Assembly (NCBI RefSeq): GCF_036321535.1
Contig: NC_087444.1
Span: forward strand, 69,068,001 to 69,132,000
Source of the DNA: Camelus dromedarius
Lineage: Eukaryota
Direction of reading: 5' to 3'
Length of the DNA: 64,000 nt
This document shows positions 11,404 to 62,959 of this stretch, one piece after another (the stretch's first letter is position 1; every line of letters starts with the position of its first letter). The translations under genes and the position numbers were made by a program. The notes beneath the pieces are model-generated. The model worked only from the letters and a program-made list of their open reading frames with translations, was not told the DNA's origin and did no database searches.

Positions 11404-11519
11404 GGAGGAGGGTATAGCTCAATGGTAGAGCGCATGCTTAGCATTCACAAGGTCTTGGGTTCAATCCCAGTACCTCCATCAAAAGTAAATAAGTAAACCT
11501 AATTACCTCACCCCACAAA
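11404..11519 (+). mobile_element. tRNA-Ala-derived SINE (Vic-1-like) with TSD
   Basis: ggagggtatagctcaatggtagagcgcatgcttagc...ggttcaatccc, A-rich tail, flanked by aagataacttccag on both sides. Confidence 0.88.
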
Positions 11520-34542: not shown

Positions 34543-34630
34543 TTTTTTTTTGAATGGAGATACTGGGGATTGAAGCCAGGCCCTTGTGCATGGTAAGCAT
34601 GTGCTTTACTACTGAGCTATACCCTCCCCC
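34543..34630 (-). mobile_element. tRNA-Ala-derived SINE
   Basis: Reverse complement gggggagggtatagctcagtagtaaagc...ttcaatccccagta. Confidence 0.85.
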
Positions 34631-43702: not shown

Positions 43703-43911
43703 AGAATTAAGGAAAGAAACCATGTGATAGATGAGGTGAAGTGTAAGTCTCCTTCCCTTGAATACAGGCCAGTCCCAGCATAACTCACTTCTAATAGAGA
43801 ATACGGTGGAAGCAGCCCTGAGAAATCTCATGCTAGGAGAGGCCGTGTGCAGCCATTCCAGCATCAACCACCCTCTTTGCTGTGAGGAAGGCTTCCTTCC
43901 ACAAGGCTCTA

Positions 43912-44427
<516 letters not shown>

Positions 44428-45576
44428 TCACTACTGCCCTCCAGTTGCTGCAGGCAGAAATGTGGGAGCCGTCCTGGCCTGTCTTTCTCTCACAGCTCAC
44501 ATCACTGGACATTACCTCCTGGCTAGACCAAAACAGCAGCCTCCTCCCTGGTCTCCCTGCCCTGGCCTCCCACATTCTGTTCCTCCTGCACAGCCAGAGG
44601 GGGCCTGGGAACATCCAGAGAGGTTGGATCTCATCTGTGGCCCCACTTACTCCAGGTAAAAGCAAAGGCCCCATCGGGTCCACGAGGCCCCACCTGATCT
44701 GTCCACATCAGACTTCTGATCTCACTGCCCAACCATCTCCCCTTCACTTGCTCTGCTGCGGCCATGCTCCTGCCTCACAGCCTTTGCAAAAGCTGTGCCC
44801 TCTACCTGGAGTCCCCTGCTCTCCCCACACCTCCCTCATGTCACTTCCCTTCCCTGGGAGGCAGTGGGAGAGATGAAACAGAGGTGAGGAGTATGGACTG
44901 TGGAGACAGACAACCTGGTCCCACATCCACACCCCAGCTCGACCAGCCACAAGCTGTGTGACCTCTGGTAAGCTGATGGGCCTATCTGTGCCTCCATTTC
45001 CTTAGCTATACCAGGAAGGCAATAAGAACAGCTACTTGTTACTGAGCACCTACTATGTACCACTATAAATAGAACTCAAAGGAGTTTTAAGAGAATTAAG
45101 TGGCATTCATCTGTAAGGTGCTCAGATGGTGCCTAGTACACAGTAGGTGCTCAATAAATGCCAACTGTTGGCATTAACTGCTCCTGGTACCCTGCAGCCT
45201 TCCTTTCAGATTATTCGGGGCAACCATTTGTTTAATGTCCACCTCCTCGTAAACTGGGAGCTCTGTGAGGGTGGAGATCTGGTCTGTGTATCCACGGCTC
45301 TGTCATGTCCTCTAGGATGCTCTCCCTGTCTCAGGGTGGGTCAGACACCTCCTCTGGGCACCCCGTGTCCTCTGGGCTTTTTCCATCTGAGCCCTGATCC
45401 CTCTGCCCATACTCCCCCTCCCCATCATCCTGGCCCTGACTACTCTGGCCAGTCACTGTTTGATAATGGCTCTGTTGCCACTTCCCTCCTATCTGTGAGA
45501 CCCAGAGTGCAGGGCCCAGGGCTGTATTGTGTCCCTGGCATCACTCAGCAATGTTCAGGCGAGTACTTGGTGCTCA

Positions 45577-45783
<207 letters not shown>

Positions 45784-45918
45784 TTAGAGGAGACAGAGAG
45801 TGGCTGTCACTGGTGGGTGGCGGCGGTGGTGGGGGTGGCAGGGGCGGGGCCGGGGGTGGGGGTGGCACCGGGGGCCGAGGTGCAGGGGTGGGCCGTGGGC
45901 ATAGGGGGGGCCTAGTAC

Positions 45919-46083
45919 TAAGGTCATTGCGGGTGCCCAGCAGCACGATGACGGCGTCCTGTCCAGCCACGGTCTTGTCCACATCAGCTGCCTGCCGAAC
46001 ATCACCCACTATCACATGGGCTGGCTGGGGCCCCTCTGAGGGCAGCCTGGAAGCGTCCCTCACCAGCACTGTCACCTCATAAC
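45919..46083 (-). CDS. BLVRB: BLVRB exon 2
   Basis: (G)[54 protein letters not shown]. 165 nt. Confidence 0.96.
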
Positions 46084-46654
46084 CTGCAGGCAGAGAGGGG
46101 CAGAGAGGGGCAGAGAGGCAGGTCAGTGGCTTTGTGGCTGGCATTCCCAGGTGCCAGGGGCTGGGTCCTGGAGGGTGCCATGAACACCCAAATCCATCCC
46201 CTAGATCCCTTTCTCTGGGACAATGGTCTTCAGACATTTTTGCTGGCATACTCACAGTTGATATCCAGATGGTTATTAAAATAGGGTGATACCTTTATAA
46301 ATAACCGGCTCTGATGCCCCCAAGGGCCTCCTCTATGTACCCCCCTGCAACGCAACTTCTCCACCCTCCAGAAACTAAAGGGTTAATGCCCGCATCACAC
46401 TGGTCTTTGCCCCCCATCCATGGTCCTGGAGGAAGCATGAGTTGCCCAAAGGTTGTACATTGTTGGGTTTGGTCCCCCAGGCCTTCCTTACTTCTGAAGG
46501 GCTGGGCCCTGTCTTAGTGATCATTAAAGACTTTGAACATCACCTTGGCATGCCACCTACCCAAAGAACTTTGGATAACTATGTTCCCCCACAACACACA
46601 CATACACCCCCTTTTTAAAGTTTATAGCCAACATATTTCTTCCTTTGTTTTAAA

Positions 46655-47944: not shown

Positions 47945-49225
47945 TTGAGTAGGGTGATTTTTGATAAGAATGCCAAGATAATNNNNNNNNNNNNNNNNNN
48001 NNNNNNNNNNNNNNNNNNNNNNNNNNNNNNNNNNNNNNNNNNNNNNNNNNNNNNNNNNNNNNNNNNNNNNNNNNNNNNNNNNNNNNNNNNNNNNNNNNNN
48101 NNNNNNNNNNNNNNNNNNNNNNNNNNNNNNNNNNNNNNNNNNNNNNNNNNNNNNNNNNNNNNNNNNNNNNNNNNNNNNNNNNNNNNNNNNNNNNNNNNAA
48201 AAGCAACAAAAGAAAAAGTAGATACCTTGGACATCACCAAAATTNNNNNNNNNNNNNNNNNNNNNNNNNNNNNNNNNNNNNNNNNNNNNNNNNNNNNNNN
48301 NNNNNNNNNNNNNNNNNNNNNNNNNNNNNNNNNNNNNNNNNNNNNNNNNNNNNNNNNNNNNNNNNNNNNNNNNNNNNNNNNNNNNNNNNNAATATTAAGA
48401 ACTGGGCAAAAGATGTAAAGAGACATTTCTCCAAAGAAGATACACAAATGGCCAATAAATACATGAAAAGATACTCAATATCTTTAGCCATCAGGGAAAT
48501 ACCAGTCAAAACCACAGTGAGATATCCTTTCATACCACTAGGATGACTATAATCAAAAGACATAATAAACGTTGGTGTGCATGTGGGGAAACTGGAACCT
48601 TCCTAGACTGCTGATGGGAGTGTTGAATGATGCAGCTGCTTTGGAAAACAGTCAGACAGTTCCTCAAAAGNNNNNNNNNNNNNNNNNNNNNNNNNNNNNN
48701 NNNNNNNNNNNNNNNNNNNNNNNNNNNNNNNNNNNNNNNNNNNNNNNNNNNNNNNNNNNNNNNNNNNNNNNNNNNNNNNNNNNNNNNNNNNNNNNNNNNN
48801 NNNNNNNNNNNNNNNNNNNNNNNNNNNNNNNNNNNNNNNNNNNNNNNNNNNNNNNNNNNNNNNNNNNNNNNNNNNNNNNNNNNNNAAGTAACAACACATT
48901 GATACATGCCATGACATGGATGAACCTTGAAAAAATACATATTCTTTTTGCTAAGTGAAGGAAGCCACATAGTGTATGAGTTCATTTATATGAAGTGTCC
49001 CCAAGAGGTAAGTCCATATAAACAGAAAGTAGGTGAGTGGTTGCCTAGGGCTGGGGAAGGGGTTGAGCAGGAAAATGGGGAATGACTTCTAGGGGTTTAT
49101 TTTGTGGTGATAAACATGCTTTAAATTGATTGTGATGATGTTTGCATAAGTGTGAATATGTTAAAAACCACTGAATTATATGGTATGTGAATAATATGTT
49201 AATAAAGCCCTTATAAAAATGCAAA
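47945..49225 (+). mobile_element. L1 (L1MA/MB-type) ORF2 end and 3' UTR, partly masked
   Basis: agacatttctccaaagaagatacacaaatggccaa...aaaccacagtgagata...tggatgaaccttgaaa. Confidence 0.85.
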
Positions 49226-50357: not shown

Positions 50358-50490
50358 TATTATTTATTTATTTATCTGTTTATTTGGGTGGGAGGTAATT
50401 AGATTTTCTTTTTTAATAGAGGTACTGGGGATTGAACTCAGGACCTCATGCATGCTAAGCACACATTCTACCATTGAAATATACCCTCCC
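50358..50490 (-). mobile_element. tRNA-Ala-derived SINE
   Basis: Reverse-strand head gggagggtatatttcaatggtag... and (taaa)n tail. Confidence 0.82.
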
Positions 50491-53239: not shown

Positions 53240-54150
53240 AGGGAGGATAGTGTAGGTGTGTGAGTGCTACATGGTGTAACTGCGTATCTGTGTGCCCATG
53301 TGACCCTGTGTGATTCTGTGAATAACTCTAAGGGAGAGCATGGTTGTGGATGACACCATGTGCCACCCTCTGTGTGTAACACTGTATTACAGTGTAAGAC
53401 TATGTGTGACACCACGTGTGGCAGGCATTGGTGCTGTCCTTGTGTTACCTTGTGGTGACACTGGATGACAGTGTGTCAATCTGTGACGCTGTAAGCATCG
53501 ATGATGCTGGGGGATATGGTGTGAGTGTGGGACATGTGAGATGCATTACATGGGAGCGTGTCACTGTTGGACTGTGACAGGGTGTGACATTGCATGTGTC
53601 ATGTAAGGTGTGTAACACTATAACACCATTTGAGTGTGGCTGTAGGTGTTACTGTAGTTGTGATGCTATTTATGACCTGTGACTCTGTGATGCATGAGTG
53701 TGACAGTGCAGGACGTATGACCCCCATGTGAATGTGTAACTGGTGTAATAAGTTTGTGTATAAAAGTGTGACACTGTGTGATGGTGAAGCCGTGGTGATG
53801 TGTGAGTATATGACACTTTGTGACCCCATGGAAGTGTGCGACTGTGTGTGACACATGTGTGCTTATGTATGACTCCGTGTGAATGGTGGTGGCACTATTT
53901 GAGTGTTTTACGTTGTGTGAAGCTGTCGGGCACAGCTTGAGTGTGGGAACTAGTGTGAGCTTGTTACTGCGTGAGACAGTTTGAATATTTGACCCTGTGT
54001 GACCCCAAACGAGGAGGTGACTGTGTGTGTGGATGTGGATAATGTTTGTGACGCTGTATATGACCCCGTGTGTGTGGCAGTGTGTGACTGTGTGTGACGT
54101 TACCTCCGGCCCCTGCATCTGTGCATCGCACACCGTGGCCGAGTGTGTGT
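53240..54150. repeat. Degenerate TG/CA-rich low-complexity tract
   Basis: Many tgtgac, gtgtga and tgtgt units over about 900 bp. Confidence 0.8.
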
Positions 54151-54289
54151 CCGTGCGTGGGCCAGCGCTGCAGGCGGTCGGGGTTGGCAGGGGACCGCGG
54201 GCGGGAGGGGGTCCCGGGGGCGCGCCGAGCGCGGCGTCCGCGCGAGCGGGAGGAGGCGCGCCGGCGGCGGCGCATGCGGATCTGGCCGA

Positions 54290-54417
54290 GCGGCGGGGCA
54301 GGTGGGGCCGGGCCGAGCCGAGCCGGGCCGGGCCGGGCCGGGCCTCGGACGCCGACAGGGAGGGCGGTCGGGCACGACGAGCAGCGGGGACAGCGGCACC
54401 AGCGGCCGCGGGCCCAG
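54290..54417 (+). other. SPTBN4: SPTBN4 non-coding exon 1 (5' end approximate)
   Basis: GC-rich exon ending CCCAG|GTGAGC at 54418, inside the CpG island upstream of the coding exon. Confidence 0.7.
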
Positions 54418-56610
54418 GTGAGCGGCGTGGGGGCGGATAGCCCCTCCCTTCAGCATCTCCCCACCTGCCCGAGCATCCCTCCCCCGCGCGCCGTGGGCAT
54501 GGCCTGAGCCCCCAGGGTCTCCCCGGCTTGGGGAGGCAGAGGGTCGAGGGCAGAATCAGCCCCTACCCCTCAACCCAGTCCAGCCTGCGCGCCATACGTG
54601 GGTCTTCCAGACAAGCCTGTCCTTTCCAGGCCCCCCTCCTTGGGAACGGTGACTAGACTGCGGAGAGAGAGAGGCGCGGCCTTGGAAGGGTTAAAGAATC
54701 CAATCCTAGATTCCAGCCCTAGCCTCGCGGAGCCAGCCTTTTCTGGGGCCGCAGGACACCCCTTTCCACCTCCCCCACCGCTCTCCCTTCTCCATTGAAT
54801 CACGTAATGGCCAGGGCTGTTCCCCCGCCGGCCTGACTGAGAGCTCACCAAGCGCTAAGTGCCTCCCCATCTCCAAGTACCCTCCATTGAGGAAACAGTT
54901 GTGCTCACCGTTTAACAGAGAGGGAAACTGAGGCACAGAGACGCCAAGTTAAAGATAATCGGGTTTAAAGATACAGCAAGAATAAAGCAGGACTTGGAAC
55001 TCATTTCTGTCTGACTCCAGCACAGGCACTTTGATTTGCTAAGGTATGTGACCAGAGGATGACTAATAATAGCAAGGCTGGTGTTTTGAGGACTTACTGT
55101 CAACTGGATACCATGTTTCCTGCATTATTAATTCTCTCATTTTCAAACATGCCCCAGGAAATGGGTACTATTATCATTAATTAACATTTTACAGATGAAC
55201 AAACTGAGGCCCAGAGAGGGGAAGTGACTTGGCCAAGGTCACACAGGTGGTAAGTAGCTATGTGTCCACTTACAGCTTTCCATGGAAGAAGGGAATAATA
55301 ATAATGGATTTTGGAGTGTCCACTGAAAGGGACAGCCTCTGCTACACTGACCAAGACCTAGATCCTGACTTCCTAAAATCGGGTGGGTTGACAACTATCT
55401 GAATATTTTGAGGAGGACATTGATCTCTTCCCAGTTCCCTCCTTTCTTAGTCTTAGAATCAGGTTTGGGGTCCCAGAGGGTGGAAGAGTTATATCTAATA
55501 TCTCTCATCCCCTTAATTTTCATATTTACAATCTGGCAGTGTTCTAGAACATAGCTCTGGAGTCAGACAAAATGTCAGTTAGCTATTGCCACAATAATGC
55601 TGGTTATTGCCACAATAACCACCCCCCCCAAAAAATAAACTTAAAAAAAACACAAGAAACCACCCCCAAACTCAGTGTCTTAAAACACTAAGCATTTATT
55701 TAGTTTCAAGTCTGAGGTCAGTGATTTAGGCTGGGCTCATCTGAGATTATTCACAAGTTGCAATGGCTAGGGGGATCCTGACTGTTGATTGCTCTAGCTG
55801 ACCTTGGCTGTGATAAGGGCCTTGGACCTGGACTAGCCTAGCAGTGTTTTTCTCATGGCCACTTTCAAGCACTAGAAAAAGCATGCAAGATCTCCTGAGT
55901 CCTGGGCTCAGAACTCACCAGCACTTCCATCTAATTCTGTTGGTCAAAGCAAGTCATGTGACCAAACCCAGAGTCAAGGGGTGGGGCATATCTCCCCACC
56001 TCACTCTCCCACTCCTCCCATCCCCAGAGTAGAACACTGATTTAAGTGGGAAAGGGTGTGGCTATAAGGATGAAGAATTGAGGGCATCAGTGCAATTCGA
56101 TCACAGTGCCAAGTTTGAACCCTGGCTAGTTACTAGCTGTGTGACCTTAGGCAAGTGAATTAACCCCTCTGTGCCTCAGTTTCTTCCTCAGTAAAATAGG
56201 CTTAATAATACCTTTCTTTAGGGAATTAAATTTGTAGGAATTAAACAAGATAATGCATATAAAGTTCTGAGCATAGTCCAAGTGCTCAATAAAAGTTAAT
56301 AATTGTTATTATTGTATTTTAGATTTCTATTGATAACAATGTTATCATTCTAACAAAAATAACAGTGACAATTTGCCCAGCCTCTACCCTGTGCTAGGTG
56401 CTAAGCTGGGTGCTTGACCACAGCCCTACAATGTGGTCAGGGTAAACATTACTGTCATTATTATTATGTCCCTTCTAAACACAGAGAAACCAACGATGAG
56501 AGAGGGGACAGGACTCACAGCCAATCACTGTTAGAAGTGGGACCTCTGAACTCAGGCCCTGTTTCTAGCCCTAACATTGCCTCTCCCCATCCCCAGGCTC
56601 ACCTTCCCTG

Positions 56611-58568: not shown

Positions 58569-58725
58569 GCAGGGAGGGTATAACTCAAGTGGTAGAGTGT
58601 GTGACTAGCATGCACCAGGTCCTGGGCTCAATCCCCACTACCTCCTCTTAAAAAAAAAAAGCCTAATTACTTCCCTCTCCCTACAAAAAGAATTCAAAAA
58701 CCAAGATAATTAAAAAAAAAAAAAA
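58569..58725 (+). mobile_element. tRNA-Ala-derived SINE
   Basis: gggagggtataactcaagtggtagag...cctaattac, A tail. Confidence 0.82.
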
Positions 58726-59223: not shown

Positions 59224-59363
59224 GGGGGGTGGAAATAGCTCAGCAGTAGAGTGCATGCTTAACATGCAAGTGGTCCTGGGTTCAATCCCCAGTACCTCCA
59301 TTAAAAAATAATAAGTAAATAAATAAATAAACCTAATTACTTCACCCCCGTCTCCAAAAAAAA
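59224..59363 (+). mobile_element. tRNA-Ala-derived SINE
   Basis: Head, (taaa)n tail, TSD gtgaacctt. Confidence 0.85.
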
Positions 59364-60670: not shown

Positions 60671-61248
60671 TCCAATTGTTTTAATGCGGATCTTTTCCTT
60701 TGCATGTGGATGACTGTGAAATGTGCATTGCTAATTAGTGTGCATGTATCCATATATTTTAACTCTTTATTAAAAGTATTACATGCATATAGAAGGGCAG
60801 ATATAGTGTGAGTGTCCAGGATTTCCACAATTAGTGCCCCTTTGTAACTAGCACCCAGATCAGGAAACAGAATTTGACAGCCCCAGAGAAGCCCCACTCA
60901 GGCTGCCTCTGTATCACTACACCCCAGAGTAAACACTGTCCTAACTTCTAAGAGTGTACATTGAATTTGCTAGCAACTGAACTTTATATAAACAGAATCA
61001 AGCAGTGGGTACCCTTCTGACAACTGGCTTCGTTCACTCTACACTTCCTCTTATGAGATTCAATTCATCCATGTCTACCTCTACTTGTATATCATCCCTT
61101 TTCATTGCTGTATAGTATTCCACAATGCGAATGTGCCCTAACTTATCTGTTCACCTGTTGGTGAGCATTTGAGGTGGCTTCGAGTTGGGGATATCACAAA
61201 CTAGATTACTACAAACTGGTAATTAGTAGTATTACAAATTGTTGCGTT

Positions 61249-61282
61249 GTTTCCATAGTGCAGTGGTTATCACATTCGCCTG
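61249..61282 (+). pseudogene. Retrotransposed 5' half of tRNA-Val with TSD (tailless retropseudogene)
   Basis: GTTTCCATAGTGCAGTGGTTATCACATTCGCCTG matches the recalled tRNA-Val(AAC/CAC) nt 1-33 at 30/33. Flanked by acaaattgttgc at 61234-61245 and 61283-61294. Confidence 0.88.
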
Positions 61283-61664
61283 ACAAATTGTTGCCGCTCT
61301 AAACTTTCTAGTACGTGTTTTTGGTGGATATAAGCACTCATTTCTGATGCTTAGACCCACCTGGGAGTGAAATTATTGGGTCACAGGGTAGGTGTAAATC
61401 TAACTATAGAAGAAACTTCCAGTTTGTATAATTTTACTTTCCTCCAACAGTGTATGAGCAATTCAGTTGCTGTATATCTGACCCTTGATGGGGTCAGTCT
61501 TTTAAATTTTAGCCATTCTGACAGGTGTGGATTCTATTGTGGTTTTAATTTGCATTTTCCTGATAGCTAATAACATTTAATGAGGTGGAGCACCTCTTCA
61601 TATATTTAGTATTTGGATATTCTCCTGTGAAGTCTTGTGCTTGTTTTCCTATTACTATTCTTAC

Positions 61665-61710
61665 TTTTTGTTTTGTTTTGTTTTGTTTTGTTTTGTTTTG
61701 TTTTGTTTTG
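61665..61710. repeat. (TTTTG)n microsatellite
   Basis: About 9 perfect units. Confidence 0.95.
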
Positions 61711-62959
61711 CAGGAGTTCTTATATATTCTGGGTACAAGTCCTTTGTCAGATACACTTGTTATGAATATTTTCTCCTACGATGTGGCTTACCTTTTCATT
61801 CTTTTAATGTTGCCTTTTGATGAACAGTATTTCTTCATTTACAAGTAGTCTAATTTAATAATTATTTAATAATTATTTCCTATTTGGCTAAGATTTTGTG
61901 TTTTGTGTAAGAAATCGTTGACTACTCCAAGATCCTGGAGATATTCTTTGATGTTTTCTTCTAAAAGCCTATTGTATCCCTTTTGTACTTTATAAGCCAA
62001 ATGGTATTTACTATATTTATTACTGTGTACAGCATGGGTCAAGGTTCTTTTTCCCCCCATGTGGACATCCAGCTGACTCAGCTCCATTTATTGAAGACTT
62101 CCCTTTCCCAACTGAACTTCAGGTTCACTCTGTCACGAATCTGGGAGCCCCCTATGTGTGGGTTTGTGAATGCAGGCATTGCTAATTGATGCGTATTTTA
62201 CTATATCTTTATTGCATTTTTTGCATTATTTTCTCATTCAGCGTTATGCCTTCTAGCCTCAAGACTCACCCCTGGGGCTCTGTGTGCCTCTACTCTGTTG
62301 CTGCTAACTGCTGCATGGAGTCTGTGGTGTGCATTCACCATGTTCCACTTTCCCAGTGATGGAGACCAGGCTGTCTCCAACCCCCAGCCTGCCCTGCTCC
62401 CTCCCCGCAAATAGCACTGTATTGAACAACATCATACATGCTCCTTGTAAACCAGTTTGGAAAAGTTTACGGGACAGATACATAGGGAAAGAATTGCTGG
62501 GTCATGGTGGGTATATGTTGATTTAATTTGACTCAGATCACCTTCTGAATGGCTGCCCTAGTCCAGAACTCCCACTGGCAGACATGAGGGTTATGATGGC
62601 CCCACATTTCTAATAATACTTGGTATCTCTGGCTTCCTAACTTTTCCCAGACTAATAGCCAAACATATCATTTACATATGAAGTCTCACTCTATGCTTCC
62701 TTCTTAACCAGTAGTAGAGAAGGGAGTAGCTATTCCCTGCTCCATGAAAATCTCAATGTATTAGATATGAAAAAAATCTCAAGATATAAAAAATTAAAAC
62801 TTTATTCTAAGGAAAAGCATTTCACTTCTGACTGGTGACTACCATAGTGGAAAAGAAAATATAAATGCTAAAATAACTCAATATGAGCACAGTGGCAGAG
62901 GTAGGACCATGATCTTTTGGCTTGGAGTCTTGACAGCTTAAAGGTTTGTGTACCAACTT

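What the first reader, a model, noticed from the sequence alone, without database searches (positions are those of the whole stretch)
61234..61294. Fossil 5' tRNA-Val half inserted with a TSD, possibly recording inosine-34
Seen: acaaattgttgc + gtt + GTTTCCATAGTGCAGTGGTTATCACATTCGCCT-G + acaaattgttgc. The insert matches the recalled tRNA-Val nt 1-33 with 3 mismatches, two of them CpG decay. It stops in the anticodon loop and has no poly(A). tRNA nt 35-37 (ACA) equal the first three TSD bases, consistent with microhomology priming. Position 34 is G, whereas Val genes with this body have A or C. Known: A34 of tRNA-Val(AAC) is edited to inosine, which reverse transcriptase reads as G; L1 can make tailless retropseudogenes; angiogenin-type cleavage yields 5' halves. 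Inference: germline retrotransposition of a mature, edited tRNA or tRNA half into an old L1.
Basis: partly seen in the sequence, partly recalled or inferred. Interest (0 to 1): 0.7.

Follow-up and report, generated by a model that had tools for sequence, protein, structure and literature searches.

The report
Camel tRNA-Val retrocopy with inosine footprint
A 34-base copy of the front part of a valine tRNA was reverse-transcribed into an old LINE-1 remnant in the camel lineage; it belongs to a class known since 2004, and its one notable feature is a G at the wobble position that probably records inosine editing of the RNA.

Summary
Window 61249-61282 (+) is nt 1-34 of the tRNA-Val(AAC/CAC) body. 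It differs from published sequences at positions 7 and 26 (both CpG decay), 13 and 34, and is flanked by exact 12-nt repeats.

I fetched orthologous loci. Two Camelus species carry the piece. Nine other mammals lack it: three whales, bison, deer, zebra, rhino, fox and cat. It is therefore a camel-lineage insertion into a LINE-1 ORF2 remnant (minus strand) shared across Laurasiatheria.

One complication is new. The outgroups carry two tandem decamers where camel has its "TSD" copies, so the gap is 39 nt, not 49. A true 12-nt TSD then needs an extra 10-nt unit loss. I favour that reading by at least 40:1, but it is not settled.

The anatomy fits the known "tailless retropseudogenes" (Schmitz 2004; Noll 2015). 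It has a TT/ACAAATT nick site, no A tail, an end in the anticodon loop and 3-nt target complementarity.

G34 as an inosine record is probable (about 0.8). Of 117 genes with this exact 5' body, none has G34. Eukaryotes lack Val-GAC genes, and reverse transcriptases read I34 as G. One locus cannot prove it.

First-stage readers of this scan noted three similar tRNA-part retrocopies elsewhere in this genome, all unchecked. Verdict: a new member of a known kind, of modest interest.

The parts
61232..61240 (+). L1-endonuclease-like target, TT/ACAAATT, with the nick between 61233 and 61234
   Evidence: Read. It fits the TT/WAAAAWW consensus for tailless retropseudogenes (PMC5322556) except for C at +2. 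That C coincides with tRNA C36.
61234..61245 (+). Upstream copy of the 12-nt direct repeat (presumed TSD)
   Evidence: It sits where outgroups have the first of two tandem decamers.
61246..61248 (+). Three extra bases (GTT) at the 5' junction: either a short pre-tRNA leader or untemplated addition
   Evidence: They are absent from the outgroups together with the tRNA piece.
61249..61282 (+). tRNA-Val(AAC/CAC body) nt 1-34, with substitutions at positions 7, 13 and 26 and G at position 34
   Evidence: against the sequences printed in PMC5639113 and PMC4928997.
61282..61282 (+). Wobble position 34 reads G, the candidate inosine footprint
   Evidence: There are 0 G among 117 genes sharing the exact 33-nt body and 0 hits for the G34 34-mer. 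The same G is present in Camelus ferus.
61283..61294 (+). Downstream copy of the 12-nt repeat. Its first three bases (ACA) equal tRNA nt 35-37, giving priming microhomology.
   Evidence: It is orthologous to the second tandem decamer plus GC in the outgroups.
61037..61775 (-). Decayed LINE-1 ORF2 C-terminal remnant that hosts the insertion
   Evidence: Minus-strand stop-free pieces are listed. The piece 61548-61775(-) matches human L1 ORF2p residues 1036-1101 at E=1e-3. The remnant aligns at 71-76% identity with orthologous DNA of whales, ruminants, perissodactyls and carnivores.

Best explanation
This is a tailless tRNA retropseudogene. In the germline of a camel ancestor, LINE-1 endonuclease nicked the bottom strand at TT/ACAAAT inside an old, dead L1 ORF2 remnant. 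This happened after Tylopoda split from the other cetartiodactyls and before dromedary and wild Bactrian camels split. [quoted passage not shown] The template was most likely a full-length molecule primed internally, possibly still carrying a 3-nt 5' leader. L1 reverse transcriptase copied back to the 5' end, so nt 34-1 plus GTT became DNA, without any A tail, between 12-nt target-site duplications. The first base copied was wobble inosine-34, which templates C, so the sense strand reads G where every gene has A or C. Later decay hit two of three CpGs and one other base. The piece keeps the A box but has no B box, so it is inert.

Shown: the insertion, its borders, the nick-site motif, the microhomology, the absence of G34 genes, and lineage specificity. 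Inferred: L1 as the enzyme, internal priming versus a pre-cut half, I34 as the cause of G34, and the TSD reading.
For: The tRNA match is 30/33, with none expected by chance. The alignment runs to nt 37 with only position 34 differing beyond the three decayed sites. The 12/12 direct repeats are exact. The target is TT/ACAAATT and there is no A tail. These features match the class defined in PMC5322556: a TT/WAAAAWW target, 3' ends in loops, 2-18 nt of target complementarity, and 647 human tRNA cases. About 29 of those are Val-AAC/CAC rows; the eight read directly are 34-38 nt long.

The orthologous site is empty in Bison, Cervus, three toothed whales, Equus, Diceros, Vulpes and Felis. It is filled in C. 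dromedarius and C. ferus. Runs labelled with three organisms hold 98% of the sampled 31-mers across the site, whereas an empty allele would lose about 7%.

For G34: the G34 34-mer has 0 hits in the metagenome collection. The 117 copies of the 33-mer are all full-length genes, with A82, C33, T2 and G0 at position 34. Eukaryotes lack GNN genes in the eight inosine boxes, and Val-AAC is an ADAT2/3 substrate (PMC8007984). Most cellular Val-AAC carries I34, which is read as G by reverse transcriptases, and pre-tRNA-Val(AAC) is also edited (10.1101/277079; PMC4446420). A simple likelihood model gives a posterior of 0.63-0.998 that G34 comes from I34.
Against: This is a single locus, so a plain A>G substitution after insertion (roughly 1-5%) cannot be excluded. 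The body is shared by Val-CAC genes, so the AAC origin is itself inferred from the G. G34 is the first base polymerised after a 3-nt primer match, a step where L1 reverse transcriptase might be error-prone.

Outgroups show two tandem decamers at the target, and the alignment gap is 39 nt, not 49. The 12-nt TSD therefore requires an additional 10-nt unit loss in the camel lineage. Fox shows a parallel A>G in both decamers, so coincidences do happen at this spot.

No alpaca, llama or pig locus could be fetched. Camel Val genes were not available to test for a Val-GAC gene or for a GTT leader.
Confidence: 0.75

Rival explanations
1. It is the same L1-mediated retrocopy, but G34 is an ordinary substitution after insertion. 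That would be A>G from an unedited Val-AAC template, or C>G from a Val-CAC template. It would not be a record of inosine.
For: Three of the other 33 positions have changed, and C. ferus has a fourth change, so the copy is old enough to have random hits. Val-CAC genes share the identical 33-nt body, at 33 of 117. I34 is less complete on early precursors (PMC4446420).
Against: Outside CpGs only 1 of about 27 insert sites and 0 of 24 repeat sites changed, so a specific A>G at one named site is about 1-3% and C>G under 1%. Most cellular Val-AAC is I34. The G is shared by two camel species.
Confidence: 0.15
2. There is no target-site duplication. The piece, with five extra 5' bases (GCGTT), was inserted exactly between two pre-existing tandem decamers of the L1. 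The route could be a blunt or endonuclease-independent L1 event, or capture of a tRNA cDNA during double-strand-break repair. The 12/12 identity would then be descent plus chance.
For: All nine outgroups have two tandem decamers in exactly the positions of the two camel repeats, and the alignment gap is 39 nt. This needs no extra indel. One whale shows the same C>T that would make the decamers more alike. Fox shows a parallel A>G in both decamers.
Against: It needs three specific substitutions, including a parallel A>G in both copies. It also needs a 1/16 coincidence that the insert starts with the same GC that follows the second decamer, and a TSD-less insertion, which is the minority outcome. 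My rough likelihood ratio is 40-900 to 1 for a true TSD plus a slippage loss of one unit (reasoning). Tandem units are prone to such loss.
Confidence: 0.07
3. The template was a pre-cleaved cytoplasmic 5' tRNA half (angiogenin-type tiRNA), not a full-length tRNA primed internally.
For: 5' Val halves of 33-34 nt are among the most abundant small RNAs in an artiodactyl tissue, with 224,679 and 126,835 reads (PMC5639113). The copy ends in the anticodon loop.
Against: The ACA match implies the template reached at least nt 37, which is longer than the dominant 33-34-nt halves; it includes a C that is unusual at +2 of an L1 site. The extra GTT at the 5' end fits an unprocessed nuclear precursor better than a half cut from mature tRNA. 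For 5S rRNA and U2, Noll et al. looked for and did not find truncated RNAs or A-tailed truncated copies, and argue for internal priming (PMC5322556).
Confidence: 0.25
4. It is a DNA-level copy of a genomic Val-GAC gene or pseudogene fragment, by segmental or gene-conversion transfer, with no RNA intermediate.
For: None was found. ARAGORN calls a 'tRNA-Val(aac)' 2 kb upstream.
Against: That call is the head of a SINE family with five copies in the window and is unrelated in sequence to the fragment. The copy starts within 3 nt of the mature 5' end and stops in the anticodon loop at a TT/A site with flanking repeats. No gene with this body has G34.
Confidence: 0.02

Closest known systems
Tailless retropseudogenes (Schmitz, Churakov, Zischler, Brosius 2004, Genome Res 14:1911; Noll et al. 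2015, GBE, PMC5322556)
   Same: It is a tRNA-derived copy with an intact 5' end and a 3' end in a loop. It has no oligo(A), is flanked by direct repeats, and sits at a TT/W-A-rich target that is complementary to the last bases of the copied RNA. Optional leader bases occur at the 5' end. Human Table S2 lists Val-AAC/CAC copies of 34-38 nt, the same size as this one.
   Different: This copy is in a camelid. The target lies in a pre-existing tandem decamer, so the TSD is ambiguous. The searchable text of Noll 2015 never mentions inosine or the anticodon. The 2004 paper was not available to me, so I cannot say whether G34 was noted there.
A-to-I editing detected as A-to-G in tRNA cDNA (ADAT2/3 wobble inosine; PMC4446420, 10.1101/277079)
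   Same: The molecule (tRNA-Val-AAC), the position (34) and the read-out (G) are all the same.
   Different: There the reverse transcription is done in a tube on living cells' RNA. Here it would have been done by L1 in a germ cell millions of years ago and fixed in the genome.
5' tRNA halves / tiRNAs (angiogenin cleavage in the anticodon loop)
   Same: The length and end point are similar to the abundant 33-34-nt Val 5' halves (PMC5639113).
   Different: This is DNA, not RNA. The template seems to have reached nt 37 and may carry a 5' leader, so a half is not required.
tRNA-derived SINEs (the CHR-2-type family present five times in this window)
   Same: They are tRNA-like sequences spread by LINE machinery.
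   Different: The SINEs keep both A and B boxes, have their own body and A-rich tail, and amplify as a family. The Val piece is a one-off dead copy.

Membership tests
Tailless retropseudogene (Schmitz 2004 / Noll 2015) | Derived from a small cellular RNA with its 5' end intact, at least 30 nt long | tested here: met
   tRNA-Val nt 1-34(37), 30/33 identity, 0 expected by chance.
Tailless retropseudogene (Schmitz 2004 / Noll 2015) | 3' truncation in a loop or single-stranded region, with no oligo(A) tail | tested here: met
   It ends at nt 34-37 in the anticodon loop, and the repeat follows directly.
Tailless retropseudogene (Schmitz 2004 / Noll 2015) | Flanking target-site duplication | tested here: inconclusive
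   The 12/12 direct repeats are exact. However, outgroups already have two tandem decamers there, so a true TSD needs an added 10-nt loss. I favour a true TSD by at least 40:1.
Tailless retropseudogene (Schmitz 2004 / Noll 2015) | Target resembling TT/WAAAAWW and complementary to the last 2-18 nt of the RNA | tested here: met
   The target is TT/ACAAATT, and its first three bases (ACA) equal tRNA 35-37 (consensus from PMC5322556).
Tailless retropseudogene (Schmitz 2004 / Noll 2015) | Derived insertion: absent at the orthologous site of outgroups | tested here: met
   It is absent in nine species of Cetruminantia, Perissodactyla and Carnivora, and present in two Camelus species.
Genomic record of wobble inosine (I34 read as G) | G34 is not encoded by any gene with the same body | tested here: met
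   There are 0 hits for the G34 34-mer. Across 117 gene copies position 34 is A82, C33, T2, G0. Eukaryotes lack Val-GAC (PMC8007984). Camel's own tRNA gene set was not available.
Genomic record of wobble inosine (I34 read as G) | The source is an ADAT2/3 substrate (A34 gene) | tested here: inconclusive
   The nt 1-33 body is identical in Val-AAC and Val-CAC genes, so the AAC origin rests on the G itself.
Genomic record of wobble inosine (I34 read as G) | Recurrence: independent retrocopies of A34 tRNAs show G34 far more often than A34 | not tested
   There is only an unchecked first-stage note of a tRNA-Ile copy with G34 in this genome (s1-170768). No whole-genome access was available.
Angiogenin-type 5' tRNA half as template | Template cut from mature tRNA (no leader) and ending at the cleavage site | tested here: inconclusive
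   The three extra 5' bases and the pairing through nt 37 argue against it but do not exclude it.

The most novel reading that the evidence does not exclude
The extra 5' bases are a pre-tRNA leader. On that reading, the locus is a germline fossil showing that a 5'-unprocessed nuclear pre-tRNA-Val(AAC) already carried inosine-34 when L1 copied it. More generally, tailless tRNA retrocopies would form a genome-wide, datable archive of ancient tRNA editing and modification. I34 would appear as G, and possibly m1I37 of tRNA-Ala or G26 methylation as misincorporations. Such an archive could be mined across mammals.
Probability: 0.3. Interest if true: 0.55.

Novelty: new member of a known kind. Interest (0 to 1): 0.4.

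Why it matters
By itself the locus is a dead 49-bp (or 39-bp) insertion in an intron-side L1 remnant and has no function. Its value is as a worked example. The class of tailless tRNA retrocopies is known. In the literature I could search, nobody has used these copies to read out wobble inosine, which reverse transcription must convert to G. If a survey confirms G34 in copies of the eight A34 tRNA families, the retrocopies would tell two things. They would show which form of the tRNA L1 grabs (edited or not, with leader or without). They would also give a time-stamped record of tRNA editing in mammalian germlines. The ortholog comparison carries a caution for anyone scoring TSDs automatically: a tandem repeat already present in the target can imitate or blur a TSD.

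Tried and rejected
- Rfam cmscan did not see the fragment even at E<=10 on 181 bases, as expected for a half tRNA. tRNA identity therefore rests on published sequences.
- No paralogous L1 copy in the window covers the insertion site.
- Schmitz 2004 (PMC524414) is not held.
- Literature searches that combined tRNA and inosine with retropseudogene, retrocopy or retrotransposition terms found nothing on I34 in retrocopies.
- Three ortholog look-ups gave nothing. The fin whale locus gave no ortholog hit, perhaps because its gene model is partial and the flank did not reach the site. The mole locus gave no match. The horseshoe bat protein was not on record.
- No alpaca, llama or pig protein with a contig on record appeared in the lists.
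- Human BLVRB entries appeared in the protein lists. I did not fetch or compare any human locus.
- I used the 112 metagenome loci only to tally the base after the 33-mer. I took none of them for human and did not pursue them.
- I rejected chance similarity, a nearby Val gene as source (the ARAGORN 'Val' is a SINE head), and a bacterial or contaminant origin.

Full report
**What is in the sequence**

Window 61234-61245 and 61283-61294 are an exact 12-nt direct repeat, ACAAATTGTTGC. These are the only two exact copies in the 64-kb window. Between them lie GTT (61246-61248) and 34 bases (61249-61282). ARAGORN and Rfam do not call this piece, so I took reference sequences from papers. The 33-nt tRNA-Val 5' half is printed in a buffalo small-RNA table (PMC5639113), and the full human Val-AAC-1-1 is printed in PMC4928997. 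The 33-mer matches 61249-61281 with three mismatches, and none of 100 shuffles gave a match.

The mismatches are at tRNA positions 7 (G>A), 13 (T>C) and 26 (G>A). Positions 7 and 26 are the G of a CpG, and the third CpG is intact in this genome. Position 34 is G, where the AAC gene has A. The next three bases, ACA, equal tRNA 35-37 and are also the start of the downstream repeat. There is no A tail.

**Surroundings**

The 'tRNA-Val(aac)' that ARAGORN reports at 59228-59300 is the head of a SINE family. The window holds five copies with A-rich tails, and they are unrelated to the fragment.

The host sequence is a decayed LINE-1. On the minus strand, stop-free pieces read like the ORF2 C-terminus. 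The piece 61548-61775(-) matches human L1 ORF2p residues 1036-1101 (E=1e-3). The L1 is therefore on the minus strand and the tRNA piece is antisense to it.

BLVRB exons lie on the minus strand at about 43.9-46.3 kb. The site is about 6.9 kb from the CpG island near 54.3 kb. It lies inside the range annotated for the spectrin gene next to BLVRB (SPTBN4 by its domains and position), in the sense orientation.

**Ortholog test**

I used an exon-bearing ORF of BLVRB as a handle to find named BLVRB proteins and cluster members. I then fetched their loci with 10-kb flanks. Human entries were listed, but I did not fetch them.

- The dromedary locus is 100% identical to window 60900-61900.
- Camelus ferus is 99.3% identical. 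It carries the insert with the same G34 and one further CpG decay at tRNA position 30.
- Bison, Cervus, three toothed whales, Equus quagga, Diceros, Vulpes and Felis all align through the L1 remnant at 71-76% identity and all lack the tRNA piece.
- Runs labelled with three organisms hold 98% of the sampled 31-mers over the site. An empty allele would lose about 7% of them.

The piece is thus a derived insertion of the camel lineage. It arose after the split from the other cetartiodactyls and before the dromedary/wild Bactrian split. The L1 host predates the split of the carnivore, perissodactyl and cetartiodactyl lineages.

**A complication in the TSD**

The outgroups do not show one copy of the 12-mer. 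They show two tandem decamers, for example ACAAACTATT followed by ACAGATTATTGC in whales. These sit exactly where camel has its two repeats, and the alignment gap is 39 nt (GC + GTT + 34), not 49. Two readings are possible.

- H1: the camel lineage lost one decamer, a 10-nt slippage deletion in a tandem repeat. This could have happened before, after or during the event, and the 12-nt repeats are a true TSD.
- H2: the piece, with five extra 5' bases, went in between two old decamers without a TSD.

H2 needs three specific substitutions, including a parallel A>G in both copies. It also needs a 1/16 coincidence for the GC and a TSD-less insertion. H1 needs one unit loss and one substitution. My rough ratio is 40-900 to 1 for H1. 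It is not settled, because fox shows a parallel A>G in both decamers and one whale shows the C>T that H2 requires. Under either reading the 3' junction is a TT/ACA site and the tRNA part is the same.

**Mechanism**

The anatomy is that of tailless retropseudogenes. PMC5322556 describes tRNA and other small-RNA copies that lack A tails and end in loops. They have flanking TSDs, a TT/WAAAAWW target, and 2-18 nt of complementarity between the target and the end of the copied RNA. The authors argue for internal priming on full-length RNAs rather than pre-cut fragments.

Their Table S2 lists 647 human tRNA cases with about 29 Val-AAC/CAC rows; the eight I read span 34-38 nt. Here the target is TT/ACAAATT. 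The unusual C at +2 coincides with tRNA C36, which suggests that pairing with A35-C36-A37 helped choose or use the site. It also implies the template reached at least nt 37.

The extra GTT may be a short pre-tRNA leader or untemplated bases. Both are compatible with the class, since Noll's screen allowed up to 20 nt for precursor sequence. A pre-cut 5' half is possible, because such halves are abundant in an artiodactyl tissue, but it is not needed.

**The G at position 34**

Several lines bear on this base.

- In the JGI metagenome collection the 34-mer ending in G has no exact match.
- The 33-mer has more than 112 loci. The 117 copies I could read are all full-length tRNA genes, with A (82), C (33) or T (2) at position 34 and never G.
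- Eukaryotes lack GNN genes in the eight boxes served by inosine, and Val-AAC is an ADAT2/3 substrate (PMC8007984).
- Most cellular tRNA-Val-AAC carries I34, which reverse transcriptases read as G (10.1101/277079).
- I34 is already present on pre-tRNAs, including pre-tRNA-Val(AAC) (PMC4446420).

In the priming model above, position 34 is the first base copied, so C opposite inosine gives sense-strand G.

I ran a simple likelihood model. It uses the non-CpG decay seen in the insert and repeats (2-8%) and the A:C:T gene mix, and lets the edited fraction range from 10% to 95%. It gives a posterior of 0.63-0.998 that G34 comes from I34.

I put the probability at about 0.8. That allows for unmodelled causes: error at the first polymerised base, an unknown camel G34 pseudogene as source, and the fact that the AAC origin is inferred from the G itself. 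One locus cannot prove the point.

**Comparison with what is known, and novelty**

The object is a new member of a described class. I found no paper in the searchable library that links inosine to tRNA retrocopies. The founding 2004 paper was not available, so I cannot exclude that it mentions G34. The footprint follows directly from known chemistry, so a specialist would find it neat rather than surprising.

First-stage readers of this scan noted three more tRNA-part retrocopies elsewhere in this genome: Ile with G34 (s1-170768), Val-CAC with a 7-nt leader (s1-188302) and Gly-GCC (s1-193405). They are unchecked and I could not read them. They do suggest that the survey proposed under next steps is feasible.

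**Limits**

- No lamine or suine ortholog could be fetched.
- The camel tRNA gene set was not available.

Noticed in passing
window 59228-59300, 58574-58646, 11408-11478 (+); 50417-50488, 34555-34626 (-): Five tRNA-like hits are heads of one SINE family, each followed by an A-rich stretch and a shared CCTAATTAC tail. ARAGORN labels one of them tRNA-Val(aac), which could mislead annotation as a Val gene 2 kb from the fragment.
   Followed up: yes
window 61225-61300 and orthologous loci L113, L115, L117-L122, L124: The L1 target carries an old tandem decamer pair. Position 8 of both decamers is A/A in whales, ruminants, perissodactyls and cat, but G/G in fox and camel. This is a parallel change in both units in fox without any insertion.
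   Followed up: partly
L123 (Camelus ferus) about 1150-1190, orthologous to window 61249-61282: The wild Bactrian copy has one more CpG decay (tRNA position 30 G>A) than the dromedary copy. G34 and the other three changes are shared.
   Followed up: yes
window 61274 (tRNA position 26) and 61261 (position 13): Position 26 is usually a methylated G in eukaryotic tRNAs, and position 13 lies in a UGUAG context that resembles a pseudouridine-synthase motif; both statements are from my own knowledge and were not tested. G26>A is most simply CpG decay, but a reverse-transcriptase misreading of a modified base cannot be told apart from decay at one locus.
   Followed up: no
window 61668-61705: A (GTTTT)n microsatellite interrupts the L1 ORF2 remnant and reads as a KQNKT repeat on the minus strand.
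   Followed up: no
window 43909-46255 (-) and about 54000-54500: BLVRB exons lie on the minus strand. A GC-rich island near 54.3 kb appears to be the shared divergent start of BLVRB and the neighbouring spectrin gene (SPTBN4 by its domains and position). The tRNA piece lies in the spectrin gene's 5' intronic range, in the sense orientation.
   Followed up: partly
window about 47950-48960: Runs of N (1036 in the window) lie inside an AT-rich repeat region.
   Followed up: no
paper PMC11353709, methods: A commercial qPCR target called 'tRNA-Val' (an RNAcentral entry) is printed as the 33-nt Val body followed by G and then CC. It shows the same G after nt 33 and then leaves the tRNA sequence. This may be another retrocopy or an edited read. 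It is a human entry, so I did not pursue it.
   Followed up: no
The stretch is not part of the finding and was not used afterwards.
   Followed up: no
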